Assembly (NCBI GenBank): GCA_001179505.1
Contig: CDMY01000405.1
Location: 124,001 to 188,000 of the forward strand
DNA from: Vitrella brassicaformis CCMP3155
Taxonomy: Eukaryota > Protista > Chromerida
Reading direction: 5' to 3'
Length of the DNA: 64,000 nucleotides
Position 1 is the first letter of the stretch; every line of letters begins with the position of its first letter. Made by a program: the position numbers and the translations under genes. Positions 28,001 through 36,417 of the stretch are shown in pieces. The notes under the pieces were generated by a model, which worked only from the letters and a program-made list of their open reading frames with translations, was not told where the DNA came from and did not search any database.

Positions 28001-29509
28001 GGTTGAAGGTGGTGCCGCTGGCGCCGCTGGGCACATAGGCCGCCTTGCCAAACACGCAGTAGTTCTTGCCGCCAACCGTCTGGAGGGAGCAAGTTGCGTA
28101 ACCTAACACACACACACACACACACACAGCCACACATACATAGCACGGCGATGAATGAGGGTGCAGCAGAGCAGAGCAGTGCAGTGGCAGTGGCGCCCAC
28201 CCACCCACCCTTATTGCTGTTGGACCCCTTTTGGTATCCGACGTATTCGTATGTGTTGATGTCGTCGGGGGGCAGCATCTTCTCGGAGGCGGAGCCGCTG
28301 GCGTACCCGATGAGGGCGGGGTACTTGGTGTCGTCACCGGTGCCCTGCGGGTCCAGCTGCAGCGGGTTCGCACGGTTCGACAGGCACCTGCACACACACA
28401 CACACACAAAGAGAGAGAGAGCACGCAGCGATGAGCGGAAGATCAGAGATCTGCGCGTGGGGAGTGCAGGTAGATCTGTGTGTTTGTACCCGTCTCTTGC
28501 GTCCCCGACGGTCATGGCGTGGTGGACCAAAAAGTCATCGTCGGGATCTCGGTCCTCAAGAGAGATGGAGAAAGGGGCACCTGATACCNNNNNNNNNNNN
28601 NNNNNNNNNNNNNNNNNNNNNNNNNNNNNNNNNNNNNNNNNNNNNNNNNNNNNNNNNNNNNNNNNNNNNNNNNNNNNNNNNNNNNNNNNNNNNNNNNNNN
28701 NNNNNNNNNNNNNNNNNNNNNNNNNNNNNNNNNNNNNNNNNNNNNNNNNNNNNNNNNNNNNNNNNNNNNNNNNNNNNNNNNNNNNNNNNNNNNNNNNNNN
28801 NNNNNNNNNNNNNNNNNNNNNNNNNNNNNNNNNNNNNNNNNNNNNNNNNNNNNNNNNNNNNNNNNNNNNNNNNNNNNNNNNNNNNNNNCCCCCCCCCCCC
28901 CCCCCCCACACACACACACATGCGCACGCAGGAGAAGCTGATGACGTAGATCGACGAGTGTGTGGGTATCTGTGTTGCCTCCCGACGGACCAGCAATGAG
29001 TGTGGTGGCGTTGCCGTGGCCGGTGGAGCCGACGACGTACTCATTGTAGACGGTGACCTTGCCAATGGAGTCCTCCTCCATATATCCCTTGTGCGAGATG
29101 TATCCCGGGTTCAGACGACGCTGACAGATGGACAGACGCCATAGACAGAGACCATACAATGGATGGATGAGCAGCCACAGATGCAGGCAGGAGACACGGG
29201 ATCTCTTCGCACCTTCATGAGAAACTGGAAGCCTTCCATGTCATCGTACTCAACCGTGTGATACGTCCTGCACACAACCGACACACAGGGAGGCAGAGAT
29301 CTCGCCCATCCACACGCATATATGAGGCCAAGATCCCATCCACACGTCAGATCTCCCTCTCCCGACATGAGATGCGTCCATTTCCTCCTTCCCTGCACGC
29401 GTGTGTGTCCTTACTTGTATTGTTGTGCCTTGGCGCAGGTGAGTAGCGCGAGGAGGGTGGCGGCGATGACGCAGCACCCCCCTGCCATGAGGGCGCCGCG
29501 GACTCTCAT
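13053..29509 (-). CDS. Giant modular cell-surface glycoprotein (signal peptide, repeated beta-rich modules, C-terminal GPI-type signal); roughly 65 introns, approx. 3,300-3,600 aa
   Basis: Starts MRVRGALMAGGCCVIAATLLALLTCAKAQQ at 29509. About 65 GT-AG introns by hand count separate GC3-rich exons whose phases joined wherever I checked. Ends KKSGAVATAGQPLYATILVTLLAIALGRFF-stop at 13053. Many N-x-S/T sequons. One gap (28589-28888) interrupts the 5' part. Confidence 0.85.
28589..28888. other. Assembly gap (300 N) next to a poly-C tract
   Basis: Run of N inside the giant gene, followed by a long C run and (CA)n. Confidence 1.
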
Positions 29510-30309
29510 GTCGGCTGACCGACAGCAGCTGCTCAGAGGCAATTTAGAGAACGAACGGCGCCGGTGGAGACCCTCCCGGCCGCACGGATGGACGAGATCA
29601 GGCGGAGGATGGAGGAGAAAGCGCTCTAGAGGTGGAGAAAAGGGCGGAAAAGATCGGGAAAGAAAAGCGACAGAGTGAGCAGGATCAATTCGCCGCGAAA
29701 CGCGCGGGAAACCAACTTGGCACCTTGAATTTTTAGATCAGCTTTTTGGGGGCCGTCCGGGTGGCCAGGACGAACCCCCAAAAGCTCGCATATCATGCCG
29801 GAATGGCAGGCTGGCGAAGAGAGGGCAAGGCCTGAGCGGACGGTCCTTCCGCTGGGCGGTATGTGATCATGCGTTGGAGATGGGGCATGGTCTGGTCCGG
29901 CGGGGAGGACAACGGAACACGATGCAGTGAGATGGATGGATCCGCAAGGAGCCGGCAGATCTACGGACACTGTGTGGTTGACCGTGGTTGCAATGGGCGG
30001 ACAGATGCGTGGTGCCGTGCTCGTGCATGGCCATGGTGTACATCCGTGACAGCGATGAGTGACGTACGTGTCATCAAAAATCGCTCATCACTGTGGCAGC
30101 GCATGCGTGTACACCACATGCACCATGCGCAAGCCCGCCAACTCCACGTACGCACAAGCCAGAGAGAAATCGACGAGCAGCTAGTGCATATGAATAAAGG
30201 GCAAGCACACCACACACCGTGCAAACAGGGCGGAGAGAGAAAGGCATGATTACACGAACGTGACTATCTGTCTGCCCGCCAGCAACGGCAACGCGCATGG
30301 CTCTAGATA

Positions 30310-33300
30310 TCACTTTCCTGCCCCCTCCCCCTCCCGCTCCCCCTGCCTCTCCCCGCCCTCTGCATGCGGCACATCCTCACTGTCGTACGACACCTTCTTC
30401 TGCCACACCTGGTGACCGCCGTGACCGTGACCATGGCCATGGCCATGCCCGCCATGCCCACCACCACCACCACCACCTGCTGCTGCTGCTGCTGCTGCTT
30501 TGGACGAGGGCTTGTTGTCCTTGGGCTGAGTGCTGCTGGAGGGATGGAGCTCCCCGCCGCCGTATGACCGGCTCCTCTGTCGACCTGACTTGGCCTTGCC
30601 GCCTCTTCCGGCAGCCGGATGCTGCTCGTGGTGGACAGGGATGTCCTTGTCGTGCCACTGACCCTTGAGGATGCGCAGCAATGTGTTGACCGCATCACCA
30701 CACTGTATGAGAGAGAGAGAGAGAGAGAGAGAAGTGTTGGTTGGTTGGCCATCTGCACCCAGTCAGTGTATCTCTGTCTGTCTGGCCGCCACCGCACCCA
30801 CCTGTATGCCTTGTCTGTTGACGACCATCCTGCCGGTCTGTTTCCACCGCTGCAGGAAGGTGTCCTGTGTGTGCTGACTCACGCGTTCCGCCTTCTCCGT
30901 AGTCGGGCTGTACAGACGCTTCAAGTGACTCCTGCAACCACACGCACACAAAACCGGACAAACGACAGACAGGTGCTTTGACGTGCCACTGCACGTCAGT
31001 CCTCATGAAGCCTCCCCAGGCACCGCACCTGATGTCGAATAGCAGTGCGCTGGGCGGCATGCTTCTGAGGAGGTCGGTGGCGGGCAAGGGGGGAAGGGCC
31101 TGGTCAACCTGGGGCTCCGTGTAGCTCTGCACTCAGCCATCCATCCATCCATCGTGCACACGAAAAACGCATCAATCGAGGTCCATCCGTGTTGTGTTTC
31201 AGAGAGGGCCTGGCCTTTGGTTCTTGGCTTACGGCGACATGGGATTGGCCATCTGTGAAGGCAGTGAGGCTCAGCGGCAGCGCGTAGTGGCTAGCGATCA
31301 ATAAAGGCACGCAAGGAGGCCCGTGCAAGCTCAGGCCAAATGCTCGTGGCTGTTTGGGTGGCCGACATACCTTTCATCTTTGCCGTCACTCGCGACCTCG
31401 ACGGGGGAGAGCATCTTGACGATCTGCCGACAGAGACGGACACACGAGAGCTGGGCGTGGCGTCATGTATGTGCGTGTGGCCCACTGCAGTGCACTGCCC
31501 GTCACTGACTTGATGCAACACGCTGTCCTGCGCCAGCTGGGGTACGGGCAGCTCCGGAACCAACACCACCTGCACGACACACGAGCACACACAAAACACA
31601 GGGCAGCCACCGTCCCGTCACGAATGTCGTCAGATGCACGCTGTCAGTCTGCCTGTCCCCTCTCTCTCCCTGACTGACTGACCACAGGGACGGTCTCTGT
31701 GGTGTTGGGTTCGAGTATGAGTGGTGGCATGTCAATGCGCGTGGGGGCGCTGGCGAGTCGGGATGGGATGCGGGGCGTCTCCTTGCCGTACACAGCATCG
31801 TGGATCGCACGCAGACCTGAGACGGCCTCGCTGCTCGACACCACAAACGTGATGTTGTTCTCGCTGCAACCCTGCCATGACACAGACCACACCGGGAGGG
31901 AGCACGCGTGGATCATGTGTGTGCAATTAATTGGTGGATGGATGGATGGGATGGATGCCGTACGCCCCTTGTGCCCCTGTCTGTCTACTTGGGTGACGGC
32001 GATGATGTTGACGCCGGCGACTGCGAATGCGGTTGCGAGTCTGCCGAGGATGCCCCTGGAGCCACACATGTTCTCGCCAACCGCACAGATGATGGTGCAC
32101 TTGGAAGTCAAGGTCACACTCATCGACTCTGATGGATGAACGACATCAGACGGCAGTCAGGTGCCGCGTGCCAGAACTGGGTTTCTCCCTCCCTCCCTCC
32201 CTCACTTTCGTGCATCTCTTTGTAGAATGCATTGCGCACGGCGTCTGCCGCTCGCTGGGCGTCACGGGACACCACAGCGAAGCTTATCGAGTGCTCCGAT
32301 GACGCCTGCATGACATGGAAGGCACGGATCCATACACCGCAACGCACCAAGGCAGCCAATTGAATTGTCCATTCCACTCACCGACCTCCCCACCCACCAG
32401 CGCACCGACCTGTGAGATCATGACAACGGAGCAGCTGGCTTCGTTGACGGCCGCGAAGAGGCGGCTGGCGATGCCCGGTACACCGATCATCGACGAGCCC
32501 TCGAGAGTCACCAACGTGATGTCTGCTATCATCGTGAACGCCTGACACACACACGACACACACGACACAAGGACACAGTAGGTACAGACCCGTGAACACA
32601 TTGGTGTGTCGATTGATGACAGCTCACTTTGCATGGCGAGACGTCCATGAGGGTGAAGTCGTCAGTGTGTGGGCCGTCGCACTCGCCGTCGTGTTTGCTG
32701 CCGTTGACGTTGGCGGCATTAGGTGGGGAGGAAGGGGCGCACAGTGGCGACACAACCTGGCTGCGGTGGTTGCTGAGGGACGGACAGGACAGGGAGGGGG
32801 GGAGAAAGAAGGTTAGCTTGTGACTGTATCGTGTTGGGTCTGTGACTGTAGCTCAGCTGACCTGATGAGTGTGCCTGATGATTCTGGTCTGAGGGAGCTC
32901 CTCAGGTGGATGGGGATGGAGTGCTGAATGCACGGATGCATCGTGAATGGATGCAACACCTGACCACACACACACACACATACACAGGGGGAGAATAAAG
33001 ACACATATATAATGTCCCGCCCTGCCCTGCCCTCCCCACCGCTCACTCACCTTAGCTCCGAAATAGGCCAGCTCGATGGCCTCGGTATAGGACACGAAAG
33101 GCAGGCGGAATGCGGCGGGGACCTTCCTGGGGTCGGCCGTATAGACGCCGTCCACATCTGTCCATATGACCAGCTTGCTGGCCTTGAGCAGCGCCGACAG
33201 CAGCGAGGCCGAGTAGTCGCTGCCGTTCCTCTTGAGCGTCGTGGGTGTGCCGCTCTGGGTGGAGCAGATGTAGCCCGTCACCACCACTATGTCCACGTCG

Positions 33301-33986
33301 GGGTGCGTCTCCATCCACTTGTCCATGTGCTTCTGCGACTTGGGGAAGTCGAGCAGCACCCGCTCGTGCACCGACATGCTGCCCGACCGGCTGGAGGGGT
33401 CCTGCACCGTCAGGATGTCGCGGGCGTCGATCCACTCCACCTGCCGCCCCTCACCGGCCTTGTGCACCCGCTCCCGCAGCAGCGCCCTCAGCAGCTGGGC
33501 CGACCACAGCTCGCCGTAGCCCGTGATGAGCTCCTTCATCGTCTCTGGGCAGGTGCCCGTTATCGACACCGCCTTGAGGATGTCCTTGATGTCCTCGATG
33601 TCCCTCTCCAGCGTCGACTGGAAGGCAGCCGCATCCTCGGCGCTGAAGTCGCCCGCCGCCGCGAGTGTCTGCACCGTCTGGATGTGCTTGTCGTGGATCC
33701 GGCCTGTCAGCGACAGATAGCCGGCCTTTTCGTCCTTGTGCGGGGTCTTCTTCCGTACGTGGAAGGCCGCAGCCGCCTCGGTGCATGAGGCGAAGAGGGA
33801 GTCGGTGACGCCTGCCATGGCAGAGACCACCACCGCCAGCCGGGCAGGGGCAGTGGCCGCACTCTGCAGCACCAGGGTGGCCACATTCTGGTAGCGATCA
33901 GCGCTGCCGACGCTCGTGCCGCCGAACTTGTGCACCATCCATGACGGAGGCATCACGAAGGACGGATGCTCCCCGGCCGATGACAT
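30310..33986 (-). CDS. Aspartate kinase (ThrA/AK-HSDH type kinase + two ACT domains) with a divergent C-terminal extension
   Basis: HKFGGTSVG, TTLKRNGSDYSA, WTDVDGVYTADPRKV, EAIELAYFGAKVLHP. ACT1: LEGSSMIGVPGIASRLF...ISQASSEHSISF. ACT2: AVGENMCGSRGILGRL...QGCSENNITFVV. The kinase is certain; the 3' exons (31570-30310) are inferred from splice sites. Confidence 0.9.
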
Positions 33987-34182
33987 CTCTGCCGATGGAT
34001 CACCACAGATCTCTGCTCTCTTGACGCCTTCTCTCTCCTGCCCGCTCAGCTGACGACGCGGTTTCAGCTGAAGTCTGCGAGCTTAGATTGCATCCACCTG
34101 GAACATCGGCTTAAAAGGCTTTGCAAGGTACTCACCCGTGAGCGCATACCGGTCGTCTTTTCCCGTTTGAGAGGCGACCGCG
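33987..34182. promoter_or_regulatory. Probable bidirectional promoter (196 nt between divergent ATGs)
   Basis: Aspartate kinase ATG at 33986 (-) and aminotransferase ATG at 34183 (+). Inferred from geometry only. Confidence 0.55.
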
Positions 34183-36417
34183 ATGAACGGCGACAAGAAG
34201 GCGGCCGTGGACGCTGCGGGGACCGTGGCAGGCTATCGGCCATTCCGCCTGGAGCGCTGGTTTGCAAAGTATGAGTTTGATCCCAAGATCAAGCACTTGC
34301 TCTGCTGCAGGTCCGGTCGGCAACCAAAACACGACACATGACATGCATACGACGCAGGGAGATCAGCCAGCCCTCCATTGTGTGTGTTGGCTGCAGCGAT
34401 GCCGAGGCCCTTACGCTCAAGGAGGTCAGCATCAAGAGAGACCCTTTGTCGTACATACAGACAGACGCTCCTGCAGTGCAAACCAAGGACGGTCGTTTCG
34501 TGTGTGTGTCGTGTGTAGCTGTTGTCGCTGGCTGACGATGCCACTCGCCAGCAGTGGGATGAGCTCAAGCTGACCTACACCGAAAGCCAAGGGGATCCTG
34601 CTCTGCGTTATGAGATATCGACCCTGTACCCACACACGACAACCGACGACATCGTGACTGCAGTCCCCGAAGTAATGAGCATCATCGCTGGACTGCACGC
34701 GCACGTGACATTTCGGTGTCTGACATTTGGTTGCTGATCAGGAGGCGATTCTGATGGCCTTCTGGGCGCTGCTTGAGGACGGCGGACGTGTGGTGGTGAT
34801 GGCGCCACACTACCAATCCCTGTCGGAGACCGCCATGGCGCGGGGCTGTCAGGTGGATTTCTGGACGGGCCGGGAGCGGGAGGGGGAGTGGATCTTCGAT
34901 GTGGATGAGCTGGAACAGATCGTCAAGTGAGCCGAGCCCCCTGGCACGGCACGGCAGGCACGTGTGGGCTATTATGTATATGCAAGTGTATGTATGTATG
35001 CCCTTCTCCTTCATTGTGGGCATGGCCTGGCTAAATTGACTGACTGACTGACTGCAGCTCAGGCCCCAAGCCGACTGTGTTGGTCGTCAATTTCCCCCAC
35101 AATCCCAGCGGCTTCGTGCCGTCACCTGCAGGTACAGGCAGGACACACACGGCATCCCATCCAGGCAGGCAGGCAACACACAGAAGGGCACATGCGTCAA
35201 GTGAAGGAGAGTCCCCTCGTGTGTGTGATGGATGGCATGCATCTGATTTATCAATCAGAGTGGGAGCGCATCATCTCCCTCTGCCAGAGCCATGAGATGT
35301 ACCTGTTCTCTGATGAGATGTACTGGGAGCTCTTCCACACCACGCCCCCGCTCACGTCAGCGGTGTCGCTATACGACAAGGCCATCACCCTCAGCGGCAT
35401 GAGCAAGAGCTACGCACTCCCCGGCCTCCGGCTGGGATGGCTGGCGTGCCGCGACAAGGAATTCATGGCGAAGGTGCTGACCTTGAAGGACTTCACCACG
35501 ATTTGCGGCCCGGGACCCTCGGAGGTAATGAGCAATAGAGGCAGACAGGGAGGACGACAGAGAGGCCCGTCCAGTAGTGATGGGTGTGGGGTGCATTGTC
35601 GATGTATGTTGTTTACCAACCAGGTGTTGGCTCTGATTGCGTTGCGCAATCGCGAGAGGATCCTGCAGCGCACCCGTGCTATCATCTCGGCCAACGTCAG
35701 GGCGCTCAGGGCGTTCTGTGCCGCCCACACCTCCGTCTTCGACTTCCGTCAGCCAAGGGGGGGACTCATCACATTCATTCCCCTCAAAGGTCCCCACGCC
35801 ATCACACATATCCACTCCACGTGCACCCACAGCGACAAGGAAACCTGTTCCCCACCTACTCATGGCTCATTGATGCAGGTGCTGCAGCGTCGAAGGGCGC
35901 CGGTGCGTTTTCAGAGGAGCTGGTTCGCGAGGCGGGCATCCTGCTGCTGCCGTCGGATGAGATGGAGATGGGCGAGACCACCGGCTGCCACTTCCGCTTC
36001 GGCCTGGGCCGTGTCAACTTCCTTGAGGGGCTGCGGGCACTCCACCGATATCTCAGCTCTGGGGAGGGGGCCACAGAGAGCTGGTGAGTGTGCCGTGTCT
36101 TGAGTTGACAATGTATTGTTAATGGCGTCTGTGTGGTGTGTTGTGTGTTTGTGTTGTTCAGGTTGACTGAGGACATGATCCTCCGGCCCTCGTCGCTGTC
36201 ACTGGGAGTGGATTTGGACGGACGAGTACATGAAGGACCTGCTGAAGAGCCACGGACTGGAAAAGGACGAACCCAAGGTACACACCAGAATGACACGGCC
36301 AGGAAGGCAACAGTGGCGGCAGCAGCCATCCACGCCATCCATCCATCTGTAATGTCCTTTGTCACATCTTTTGCAGGCTTCCCAGTGAGTGGTACGGAGC
36401 CCGGTGCGCACACCTGA
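34183..36417 (+). CDS. PLP-dependent aminotransferase, class I/II fold
   Basis: FRLERWFAKYEF, LTYTESQGDPALR, NFPHNPSG, FSDEMY, SGMSKSYALPGLRLGW (PLP lysine), GILLLP, HFRFGLGR. The catalytic core ends at ~36080. The stop is at 36087 if unspliced, or at 36417 if the GTGAGT donor at 36084 is used. Confidence 0.9.

What the first reader, a model, noticed from the sequence alone, without database searches (positions are those of the whole stretch)
30690..31700. Aspartate kinase carries an apparently decayed homoserine dehydrogenase Rossmann domain
Seen: after ACT2 the spliced reading is VPVVVLVPELPVPQLAQDSVLHQIVKM...LPLSLTAFTDGQSH...MPPSALLFDIRS...FLQRWKQTGRMVVNRQ. Established: the kinase and QASSEHSI-type ACT are of the bifunctional AK-HSDH (ThrA) class, where the next domain reads roughly VFVIGVGGVGGALLEQL...NPVIVDCTS...FLREGFHVVTPNK. 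The order and spacing of elements match, but GxGxxG is gone and no HSDH catalytic/dimerisation domain follows. Inference: a bifunctional enzyme reduced to a monofunctional kinase that keeps a pseudo-enzyme domain, perhaps structural or regulatory.
Basis: partly seen in the sequence, partly recalled or inferred. Interest (0 to 1): 0.7.

Follow-up and report, generated by a model that had tools for sequence, protein, structure and literature searches.

The report
Aspartate kinase keeps dead dehydrogenase domain
In the alga Vitrella brassicaformis, the enzyme that starts threonine, methionine and lysine synthesis still carries a conserved but catalytically dead remnant of the second enzyme it was once fused to, and a few relatives of malaria-type parasites share this remnant.

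Summary
A 13-exon minus-strand gene (33986 to 30313, 12 GT-AG introns) encodes an 843-aa protein, and the exons match the public Vitrella brassicaformis record P0001 exon by exon. Spliced contigs in three runs from three studies join the kinase exon to the last exon, so the exons after ACT2 belong to the same mRNA.

Residues 1-548 are an aspartate kinase with two ACT domains, of the bifunctional AK-HSDH (ThrA) class. Residues about 576-735 form a conserved domain of about 160 aa with no Pfam hit. It has no GxGxxG motif, and no homoserine dehydrogenase (HSDH) catalytic domain follows it. A low-complexity tail of about 100 aa ends the protein.

Six other proteins share the domain, including those of Colpodella, Rhytidocystis and Cardiosporidium. 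They form one well-supported clade nested among full AK-HSDH enzymes.

Sequence and profile comparisons with HSDH are not significant. Predicted structures are HSDH-type Rossmann folds: HSDH is the top Foldseek hit, and all ten ESM Atlas shape rows are HSDH, AK-HSDH, DapB or GFO-type NAD-binding domains.

An intact, intron-containing, bacterial-type HSDH gene lies on another contig.

What the relic does is inference only. I rate it a new variant of a known kind, of moderate interest.

The parts
33051..33986 (-). Exon 1: start codon at 33986; aspartate kinase catalytic domain (residues 1-312). The 5' UTR reaches at least 34109.
   Evidence: Pfam AA_kinase, 117 bits on this exon alone. An RNA-derived contig covers 33048-34109. 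The exon equals P0001 1-312.
32862..32959 (-). Exon 2: end of the kinase domain (residues 313-345).
   Evidence: Equals P0001 313-344. AA_kinase reaches residue 332 in P0001. Joint 32772/32862.
32628..32772 (-). Exon 3: lineage-specific linker between the kinase and ACT1 (residues 346-393).
   Evidence: Joints. No Pfam match.
32206..32541 (-). Exons 4 and 5 (32410-32541, 32206-32305): ACT1, including the QASSEHSI motif.
   Evidence: ACT_9 halves, E 4.6e-9 and 9.9e-6. ACT_9 at residues 404-464 in P0001.
31683..32128 (-). Exons 6 and 7 (31989-32128, 31683-31871): ACT2, a linker of about 28 aa, and the first residues of strand beta-1 of the relic domain.
   Evidence: ACT_9 halves. PDB 6mx1 ACT region of AK-HSDH 1, E 6.5e-28 over residues 388-544..
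30637..31569 (-). Exons 8-12 and the start of exon 13 (31510-31569, 31371-31423, 31233-31290, 31029-31126, 30802-30931, 30637-30702). These encode the relic Rossmann-like domain, residues about 576-735. Its conserved motifs are VVLVxEL, FTDG, LxDxR and FxxxWxxxGRxVV. It has no GxGxxG.
   Evidence: All introns are removed in RNA-derived contigs of 3 runs. No Pfam hit. Conserved in 6 other proteins. Models have pLDDT 71 and 86.9. HSDH-type fold matches.
30313..30636 (-). Rest of exon 13: low-complexity C-terminal tail (residues about 736-843) with poly-Ala, poly-Gly and (Gly-His)n. The stop codon is at 30310-30312. The 3' UTR runs to about 29863-29930.
   Evidence: P0001 sequence.. RNA-derived contigs cover 29863-30414 and break at the repeat 30415-30507.

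Best explanation
This is the expressed aspartate kinase gene of Vitrella brassicaformis. It was the only AA_kinase match in the genome that I identified as an aspartate kinase. The best other match is an acetylglutamate kinase, and the weaker matches were not examined.

The protein descends from a bifunctional ThrA-type aspartate kinase-homoserine dehydrogenase. The kinase and both ACT regulatory domains are intact, so it should phosphorylate aspartate, probably under amino-acid feedback through the ACT domains.

Of the former dehydrogenase half, only the N-terminal NAD-binding Rossmann domain survives, as a remnant of about 160 aa. Its glycine-rich dinucleotide loop is replaced by VPELPVP. 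The catalytic and dimerisation domain is gone, replaced by a low-complexity tail. The remnant therefore cannot reduce aspartate semialdehyde. A separate bacterial-type HSDH gene on another contig most likely supplies that step.

The remnant is kept in a clade of relatives of apicomplexan parasites: Vitrella, Colpodella, Rhytidocystis, Cardiosporidium and three unnamed transcripts. Its most conserved residues sit in the loops after strands beta-1, beta-2, beta-4 and beta-5, the edge of the sheet where Rossmann domains bind ligands. I infer that it is retained as a non-catalytic module. The most likely role is a structural or allosteric partner of the ACT and kinase core. Binding a ligand or a partner protein is less likely.

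Shown: gene model, expression, domain content, conservation, HSDH-type predicted fold, and the separate HSDH gene. Inferred: descent from HSDH, and the present role.
For: Gene and transcript:
- 13 exons and 12 GT-AG introns; each exon is identical to P0001.
- One spliced contig from exon 1 to exon 13 in runs X7 and X8, and from exon 3 to exon 13 in X1, three studies in all.

Domains:
- AA_kinase 133 bits, ACT_9 x2 110 bits, and nothing after residue about 548.
- No PF03447 or PF00742 match in the window in a six-frame genome search.

ThrA class:
- Best NCBIfam model is NF006959.
- PDB 6mx1 ACT region of AK-HSDH 1, E 6.5e-28.
- Nearest relatives outside the clade are AK-HSDH I.

Clade:
- P0001, P0002, P0003, P0004, P0032 and P0084 group at SH-aLRT 98 inside a tree dominated by full AK-HSDH.
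- A seventh member, P0162, was found with the clade profile. The score then drops from 842 to 533 bits.

Fold:
- The P0004-tail model (pLDDT 86.9, pTM 0.81) gives HSDH 3jsa as the top Foldseek hit and 12 HSDH entries in the top 50, with prob 0.57-0.97 and TMq 0.43-0.53.
- VIA Z is 6.5, 6.2, 6.2 and 6.1 for four HSDH chains aligned from their first residues.
- All 10 ESM Atlas rows are HSDH, AK-HSDH-fragment, DapB_N or GFO_IDH_MocA clusters, with TM 0.54-0.60 and rmsd 3.0-3.7 over 92-103 of 120 residues.
- The Vitrella model itself (pLDDT 71) also puts five HSDH clusters in the VIA top 24.

Supporting context:
- Precedent for decay elsewhere: P0005 keeps a marginal NAD_binding_3 match (27.5 bits) without Homoserine_dh.
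- Separate HSDH at G000:C688:22746-23916: PF03447 62.5 bits and PF00742 123.9 bits, NF004976 283.9 bits against a 205 cut-off, with GFGTVGGG and VVTANK visible and the match split by an intron-like gap.
Against: - No significant sequence similarity to HSDH. An HMMER profile of 47 HSDH N-domains scores the tails at or below 0 bits.
- hhalign gives P 0.04 (18 columns), 0.14 (73 colinear columns) or 0.64, depending on the alignment.
- Foldseek E-values are only 0.02-0.1.
- VIA Z for HSDH (up to 6.5) does not stand above unrelated three-layer alpha/beta folds: cDPG synthetase 7.7, receiver domain 7.1, RimK 7.0.
- The models rest on alignments of 5 to 6 sequences.
- The tree is unrooted, and a quick search was used.
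- Nothing tested here bears on the kinase's feedback regulation or on the remnant's present function.
Confidence: 0.75

Rival explanations
1. The C-terminal domain is an unrelated alpha/beta domain, for example flavodoxin-like, receiver-like or pre-ATP-grasp-like. On this reading it was gained after the HSDH half was lost completely, and its resemblance to HSDH is only the common three-layer sandwich.
For: There is no significant profile similarity to HSDH. The top VIA rows are a cDPG synthetase N-domain, a receiver domain and RimK, at Z 7.0-7.7, slightly above HSDH at 6.5. The ESM Atlas's own model of P0001 gives only generic matches such as DUF58/VWA, guanylate kinase and DpaA_N, with TM below 0.5.
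Against: The domain sits where the HSDH N-domain sits in every close relative, and the clade is nested among AK-HSDH enzymes. Foldseek ranks HSDH first. All ten Atlas shape rows, out of 7.7 million clusters, are HSDH, DapB or GFO-type NAD-binding domains, four of them AK-HSDH fragments. Matches start at residue 1-3 of the HSDH chains and cover about 100 of 120 residues.
Confidence: 0.17
2. The tail is a still-active, extremely divergent dehydrogenase, or another NAD(P)-dependent enzyme, working without the canonical glycine loop. It might act together with another subunit.
For: Conserved residues (an acidic residue after beta-2 in FTDG; DxR after beta-4) lie at the canonical cofactor-binding edge of the sheet. 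A review states that HSDH is the one threonine-pathway enzyme not found in Toxoplasma and other cyst-forming coccidia (PMC7909243).
Against: There is no Homoserine_dh catalytic domain, and the region after the domain is low-complexity. GxGxxG is replaced by proline-containing sequence. Vitrella has a separate canonical HSDH. No coccidian member of the clade was found.
Confidence: 0.04
3. The exons after ACT2 belong to a different gene, or are an annotation artefact. The real kinase would end after ACT2.
For: Two proteins sister to the clade (P0053, P0141, 474 aa) end at ACT2.
Against: Single spliced contigs in three runs bridge exon 7 to exon 13 with GT-AG introns and an open frame. Six other organisms' transcripts encode the same fusion in one ORF.
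Confidence: 0.02

Closest known systems
Bifunctional aspartate kinase-homoserine dehydrogenase I (ThrA of E. coli; plant AK-HSDH; NCBIfam NF006959)
   Same: Same kinase and double-ACT architecture, with 39-43% identity to bacterial members. The same domain order continues into a Rossmann-type domain directly after ACT2.
   Different: The Rossmann domain has lost GxGxxG and all detectable sequence similarity. The Homoserine_dh catalytic and dimerisation domain (PF00742) is absent. The score is 417 bits against a 726-bit cut-off.
Monofunctional ThrA-related aspartate kinase (Methanocaldococcus jannaschii AK, PDB 3c1m/2hmf)
   Same: Best solved-structure match for the kinase part (E 4e-68). Functionally the Vitrella enzyme is probably also a kinase only.
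   Different: Those enzymes end after ACT2 (about 470 aa). The Vitrella protein carries about 295 further residues, including a folded domain.
Homoserine dehydrogenase NAD-binding domain (Pfam PF03447; PDB 3jsa, 3ing, 1ebf, 4ydr)
   Same: Predicted fold and order of elements. The match runs from the first residue of HSDH over about 100 residues. Aspartate-containing motifs follow beta-2 and beta-4, and a helix leads into an (I/V)V strand at beta-5.
   Different: No glycine-rich loop, no TxNK motif, and no significant sequence or profile match.
Decaying HSDH halves in other protist aspartate kinases (P0005, unnamed; Plasmodiophora brassicae P0082; Diphylleia rotans P0009)
   Same: A ThrA-class kinase with ACT domains, followed by a tail that no longer scores as a full HSDH.
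   Different: Those tails are longer (271-318 aa) and still show weak NAD_binding_3 or HSDH-profile signal. They lie outside the Vitrella clade in the tree, so they look like independent cases.

Membership tests
Aspartate kinase (amino acid kinase family + ACT; TIGR00657) | AA_kinase domain above the family threshold | tested here: met
   PF00696 at 133.4 bits against a 24.9 cut-off. TIGR00657 at 315.5 bits against a 208.7 cut-off.
Aspartate kinase (amino acid kinase family + ACT; TIGR00657) | Two tandem ACT domains after the kinase | tested here: met
   PF22468 ACT_9, two stretches, 110.5 bits. PDB 6mx1, E 6.5e-28.
Aspartate kinase (amino acid kinase family + ACT; TIGR00657) | Kinase activity and amino-acid feedback inhibition | not testable with these tools
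   Needs an enzyme assay. The KFGGTS, KRNGSDYS and WTDVDGVYTADPR motifs are visible in P0001.
Bifunctional AK-HSDH I (NF006959) | Whole-protein score above the equivalog cut-off | tested here: not met
   417 bits against a 726 cut-off. The listed best stretch covers only model positions 2-312 of 819.
Bifunctional AK-HSDH I (NF006959) | NAD_binding_3 domain (PF03447) with the GxGxxG loop | tested here: not met
   No PF03447 hit in P0001 or in the window in six frames. The sequence after beta-1 reads VPELPVP.
Bifunctional AK-HSDH I (NF006959) | Homoserine_dh catalytic domain (PF00742) | tested here: not met
   No hit in P0001 or in the window.
Bifunctional AK-HSDH I (NF006959) | Kinase and ACT part groups phylogenetically with AK-HSDH enzymes | tested here: met
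   Tree. Ranking of relatives.
HSDH-type NAD(P)-binding Rossmann domain (fold level) | Three-dimensional similarity to the HSDH N-terminal domain | tested here: met
   Predicted models only. Foldseek top hit is 3jsa, with 12 HSDH entries in the top 50. All 10 Atlas rows are of the HSDH, DapB or GFO type, TM 0.54-0.60. VIA Z is 5.6-6.5 and does not stand out.
HSDH-type NAD(P)-binding Rossmann domain (fold level) | Significant sequence or profile similarity to PF03447 members | tested here: not met
   hhalign P 0.04 to 0.64. HMMER scores at or below 0 bits.
HSDH-type NAD(P)-binding Rossmann domain (fold level) | Binding of NAD(P)(H) | not testable with these tools
   Needs a binding assay on the purified domain.

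The most novel reading that the evidence does not exclude
The relic Rossmann domain is not just ballast. It may be a lineage-specific regulatory module of aspartate kinases in the apicomplexan lineage. Its conserved crevice residues (xEL after beta-1, FTDG after beta-2, DxR after beta-4, WxxxGR before beta-5) could bind a metabolite, a nucleotide or a pathway partner such as aspartate semialdehyde dehydrogenase or the stand-alone HSDH. That would couple kinase output to downstream flux. If the domain also exists in parasitic apicomplexans that keep the pathway, it would be a parasite-specific handle on an enzyme that animals lack.
Probability: 0.2. Interest if true: 0.65.

Novelty: new variant of a known kind. 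Interest (0 to 1): 0.45.

Why it matters
Bifunctional AK-HSDH enzymes are textbook fusions. This gene shows a clear case of one half decaying into a conserved, folded pseudo-enzyme domain while a separately encoded enzyme does the lost reaction. The domain has persisted across the deep divergence between chromerid algae, colpodellids and early-branching apicomplexans. That persistence argues the NAD-binding lobe of HSDH does something for the kinase beyond catalysis, and the idea can be tested on ThrA-type enzymes generally.

It also marks a small, sharply delimited clade of aspartate kinases in the lineage leading to apicomplexan parasites. The aspartate pathway there is of interest because animals lack it, and because HSDH is reported missing in coccidia (PMC7909243). 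I found no coccidian member, so that link remains open.

Tried and rejected
Searches that found nothing or little:
- Pfam on single exons of the tail: no hits, because the exons are short.
- Word-index search with P0001 residues 570-745: found only itself.
- HMMER profile of 47 HSDH N-domains against the tails: nothing.
- hhalign of tail family against HSDH N-domains: P 0.04, 0.14 and 0.64 in three versions.
- Language-model feature search of the tail: no usable hit. Shape search with the Atlas's own low-confidence model of the whole protein: generic alpha/beta matches only.
- Papers: none in the library describes this domain.
- One look-up of the contig encoding P0002 failed because the machine did not answer.

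Ideas rejected:
- My first idea was a thioredoxin- or glutaredoxin-like fold, from the 'VVNRQGIQCGD...LLRILKG' ending. I rejected it because no such fold appears in any structure search.
- A second aspartate kinase in the genome: the best other AA_kinase locus (C401) is an acetylglutamate kinase by its sequence.
- A Toxoplasma or other coccidian member: none among the 150 representatives or the 120 best profile hits. This does not show absence.
Full report
**What is in the sequence**

The window belongs to a 72.7-Mb, 1064-contig assembly. The protein of this locus is on record as an unnamed product / aspartate kinase of Vitrella brassicaformis CCMP3155. The gene lies on the minus strand.

Six-frame reading and read joints give 13 exons: 33051-33986, 32862-32959, 32628-32772, 32410-32541, 32206-32305, 31989-32128, 31683-31871, 31510-31569, 31371-31423, 31233-31290, 31029-31126, 30802-30931 and 30313-30702. 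They are separated by 12 introns of 77-117 nt, all GT-AG.

Each exon, translated on its own, is found in order and without gaps in P0001, the 843-aa public protein returned by the representative search. Single exons were sent by reference, and P0001 was used for whole-protein work.

**Is the tail part of the kinase transcript?**

Yes. Three runs from three studies (X1, X7, X8) each hold one spliced contig of 1449-2495 nt. In X7 and X8 it runs from exon 1 (up to 34109). In X1 it starts at exon 3. In all three it reaches 30508 in exon 13, with every listed intron removed at CT..AC on the + strand. A fourth run (X6) holds the unspliced form.

The contigs break only at the low-complexity repeat 30415-30507. 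Further contigs cover 29863-30414, the end of the CDS and the 3' UTR.

**Domain content**

Pfam finds AA_kinase (residues 16-332, 133 bits) and two ACT_9 domains (110 bits), and nothing after about residue 548 (exon by exon).

Six-frame searches of the whole genome with NAD_binding_3 (PF03447) and Homoserine_dh (PF00742) find no match in the window.

The sequence after ACT2 has three parts:
- a linker of about 28 aa;
- a domain of about 160 aa (576-735) that begins VVVLVPELPVPQLAQ where HSDH has V.V.G.G.VG;
- about 100 aa of poly-Ala, poly-Gly and (Gly-His)n.

**Class of the kinase**

The best NCBIfam model is NF006959, bifunctional AK/HSDH I. It scores 417 bits, below its 726 cut-off because only the kinase and ACT part matches. 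The ACT pair matches the solved ACT region of an AK-HSDH 1 (6mx1, E 6.5e-28). The kinase matches M. jannaschii AK (3c1m, E 4e-68).

A profile of the clade finds, after the clade itself, almost only proteins carrying both HSDH Pfam domains.

**Relatives with the same tail**

Six other proteins share the tail:

| Protein | Length | Source |
|---|---|---|
| P0002 | 763 aa | unnamed transcript |
| P0004 | 689 aa | Rhytidocystis pertsovi |
| P0032 | 1100 aa | Cardiosporidium cionae |
| P0003 | 638 aa | Colpodella angusta (shortened tail) |
| P0084 | 741 aa | unnamed |
| P0162 | 871 aa | unnamed transcript contig |

Their tails have no Pfam hit either. They align with the Vitrella tail at 13-31% identity and share four motifs: VV.LV.EL, (F/Y/V)TDG, L.D(L/I)R and F...W...GR.V(V/I).

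The similarity among the tails is significant. phmmer of P0001 tail against P0004 gives E 1.7e-4. The tail profile against P0032 gives E 9.5e-8.

In a maximum-likelihood tree of the kinase and ACT part of 92 proteins, six of these proteins (P0162 was found afterwards) form one group with SH-aLRT 98. Their sisters are two proteins that end at ACT2. The whole group lies inside a tree dominated by full AK-HSDH enzymes. The tree is unrooted and came from the quick search. Full AK-HSDH enzymes lie on all sides of the clade, so a bifunctional ancestor is the simplest reading.

**Is the tail a former HSDH domain?**

Sequence methods say nothing either way. An HMM of 47 HSDH N-domains scores all tails at or below 0 bits. 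hhalign gives P 0.04 over 18 columns, P 0.14 over 73 colinear columns, and P 0.64 with a third alignment.

Structure prediction is more informative.

The Vitrella tail with a 5-sequence alignment gave pLDDT 71 and pTM 0.68. It has a beta-alpha-beta pattern and two disordered inserts. HSDH entries were the best Foldseek rows by TM and probability, though at E above 0.3. Five HSDH clusters were in the VIA top 24 of 48,161, at Z 4.5-5.5.

The compact Rhytidocystis tail with a 6-sequence alignment gave pLDDT 86.9 and pTM 0.81. Its results were:
- Foldseek: the top hit is HSDH 3jsa (E 0.024). Twelve HSDH entries are in the top 50, with prob 0.57-0.97 and TMq 0.43-0.53. Most of the remainder are GFO/IDH/MocA enzymes, dihydrodipicolinate reductases and receiver domains.
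- VIA: HSDH chains score Z 6.5, 6.2, 6.2, 6.1 and 5.6, aligned from their first residues over 96-103 of 120 residues. They are tied with unrelated alpha/beta folds, the top being Z 7.7.
- ESM Atlas shape search: this is the clearest result. All ten rows are clusters of HSDH, fragments of AK-HSDH (ACT + NAD-binding), DapB_N or GFO_IDH_MocA domains, with TM 0.54-0.60 and rmsd 3.0-3.7.

The fold is therefore specifically the HSDH/DapB/GFO kind of Rossmann domain, in the place where HSDH's own domain sits. I put descent from HSDH at about 0.75-0.8. The caveats are that these are predicted models built on very shallow alignments, and that no E-value is significant.

**Where the conserved residues lie**

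In the confident model, the four conserved motifs fall in the loops that follow beta-1 (the former glycine loop), beta-2, beta-4 and the helix before beta-5. That is the C-terminal edge of the sheet, where Rossmann domains bind dinucleotides. This argues for selection on a surface or pocket. It does not say for what.

**The missing activity**

G000:C688:22746-23916 carries a canonical HSDH. It scores PF03447 62.5 bits and PF00742 123.9 + 19.5 bits, and NF004976 283.9 bits against a 205 cut-off. GFGTVGGG and VVTANK are visible. The match is interrupted by an intron-like gap, so it is a nuclear gene rather than bacterial contamination.

The best other AA_kinase locus is an acetylglutamate kinase.

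**Mechanism, with what is shown and what is inferred**

- Shown: an expressed ThrA-class kinase with two ACT domains and a conserved HSDH-shaped domain that lacks the cofactor loop and has no catalytic domain; and a stand-alone HSDH elsewhere in the genome.
- Inferred: after HSDH activity moved to, or was duplicated by, the stand-alone enzyme, the fused dehydrogenase lost its catalytic lobe. The NAD-binding lobe was kept as a non-catalytic module. The most likely reason is that it packs against and stabilises the ACT and kinase assembly or takes part in its allostery. Less likely, it binds a ligand or partner.

**Context in the literature**

A review of apicomplexan amino-acid metabolism states that Toxoplasma and other cyst-forming coccidia have AK, ASDH, HK and TS but lack a recognisable HSDH (PMC7909243). 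I found no coccidian protein in this clade, so I draw no link. No paper in the library describes the relic domain.

**Verdict**

The finding is a new variant of a known kind, a fusion enzyme with a conserved pseudo-enzyme remnant. It is of moderate interest.

Noticed in passing
window 28590-28889: A run of about 300 N (assembly gap or withheld stretch), flanked by a poly-C run and CA repeats.
   Followed up: no
window 30313-30636: The kinase ends in about 100 aa of low-complexity sequence with poly-Ala, poly-Gly and a (Gly-His)5 run. RNA-derived contigs break at 30415-30507. The other clade members do not have this tail.
   Followed up: partly
G000:C688:22746-23916 (L001, L004, L005): A stand-alone, intron-containing, bacterial-type homoserine dehydrogenase gene with an intact GxGxxG motif. 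It presumably supplies the activity that the kinase's relic has lost.
   Followed up: partly
P0012 (813 aa): An aspartate kinase with two ACT domains fused to GHMP-kinase N and C domains (homoserine-kinase-like) instead of HSDH. This is an unusual fusion in the same pathway. The organism was not looked up.
   Followed up: no
P0005, P0082 (Plasmodiophora brassicae), P0009 (Diphylleia rotans): Other protist ThrA-class kinases outside the Vitrella clade carry tails of 271-318 aa that score weakly or not at all as HSDH. P0005 has NAD_binding_3 at 27.5 bits and no Homoserine_dh. Decay of the HSDH half seems to have happened more than once.
   Followed up: partly
window 31133-31154, 31665 and 33438: Many contigs have loose ends at GGATGG-type microsatellites inside introns. 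One odd joint, 31153 to 33438 (GT..TC, 20-nt side), occurs in two runs. It is most likely a repeat-driven assembly artefact rather than a splice.
   Followed up: no
window 34093-34310: A different, more deeply covered RNA-derived contig ends within about 100 nt of the kinase's 5' UTR. The upstream neighbour is therefore very close.
   Followed up: no
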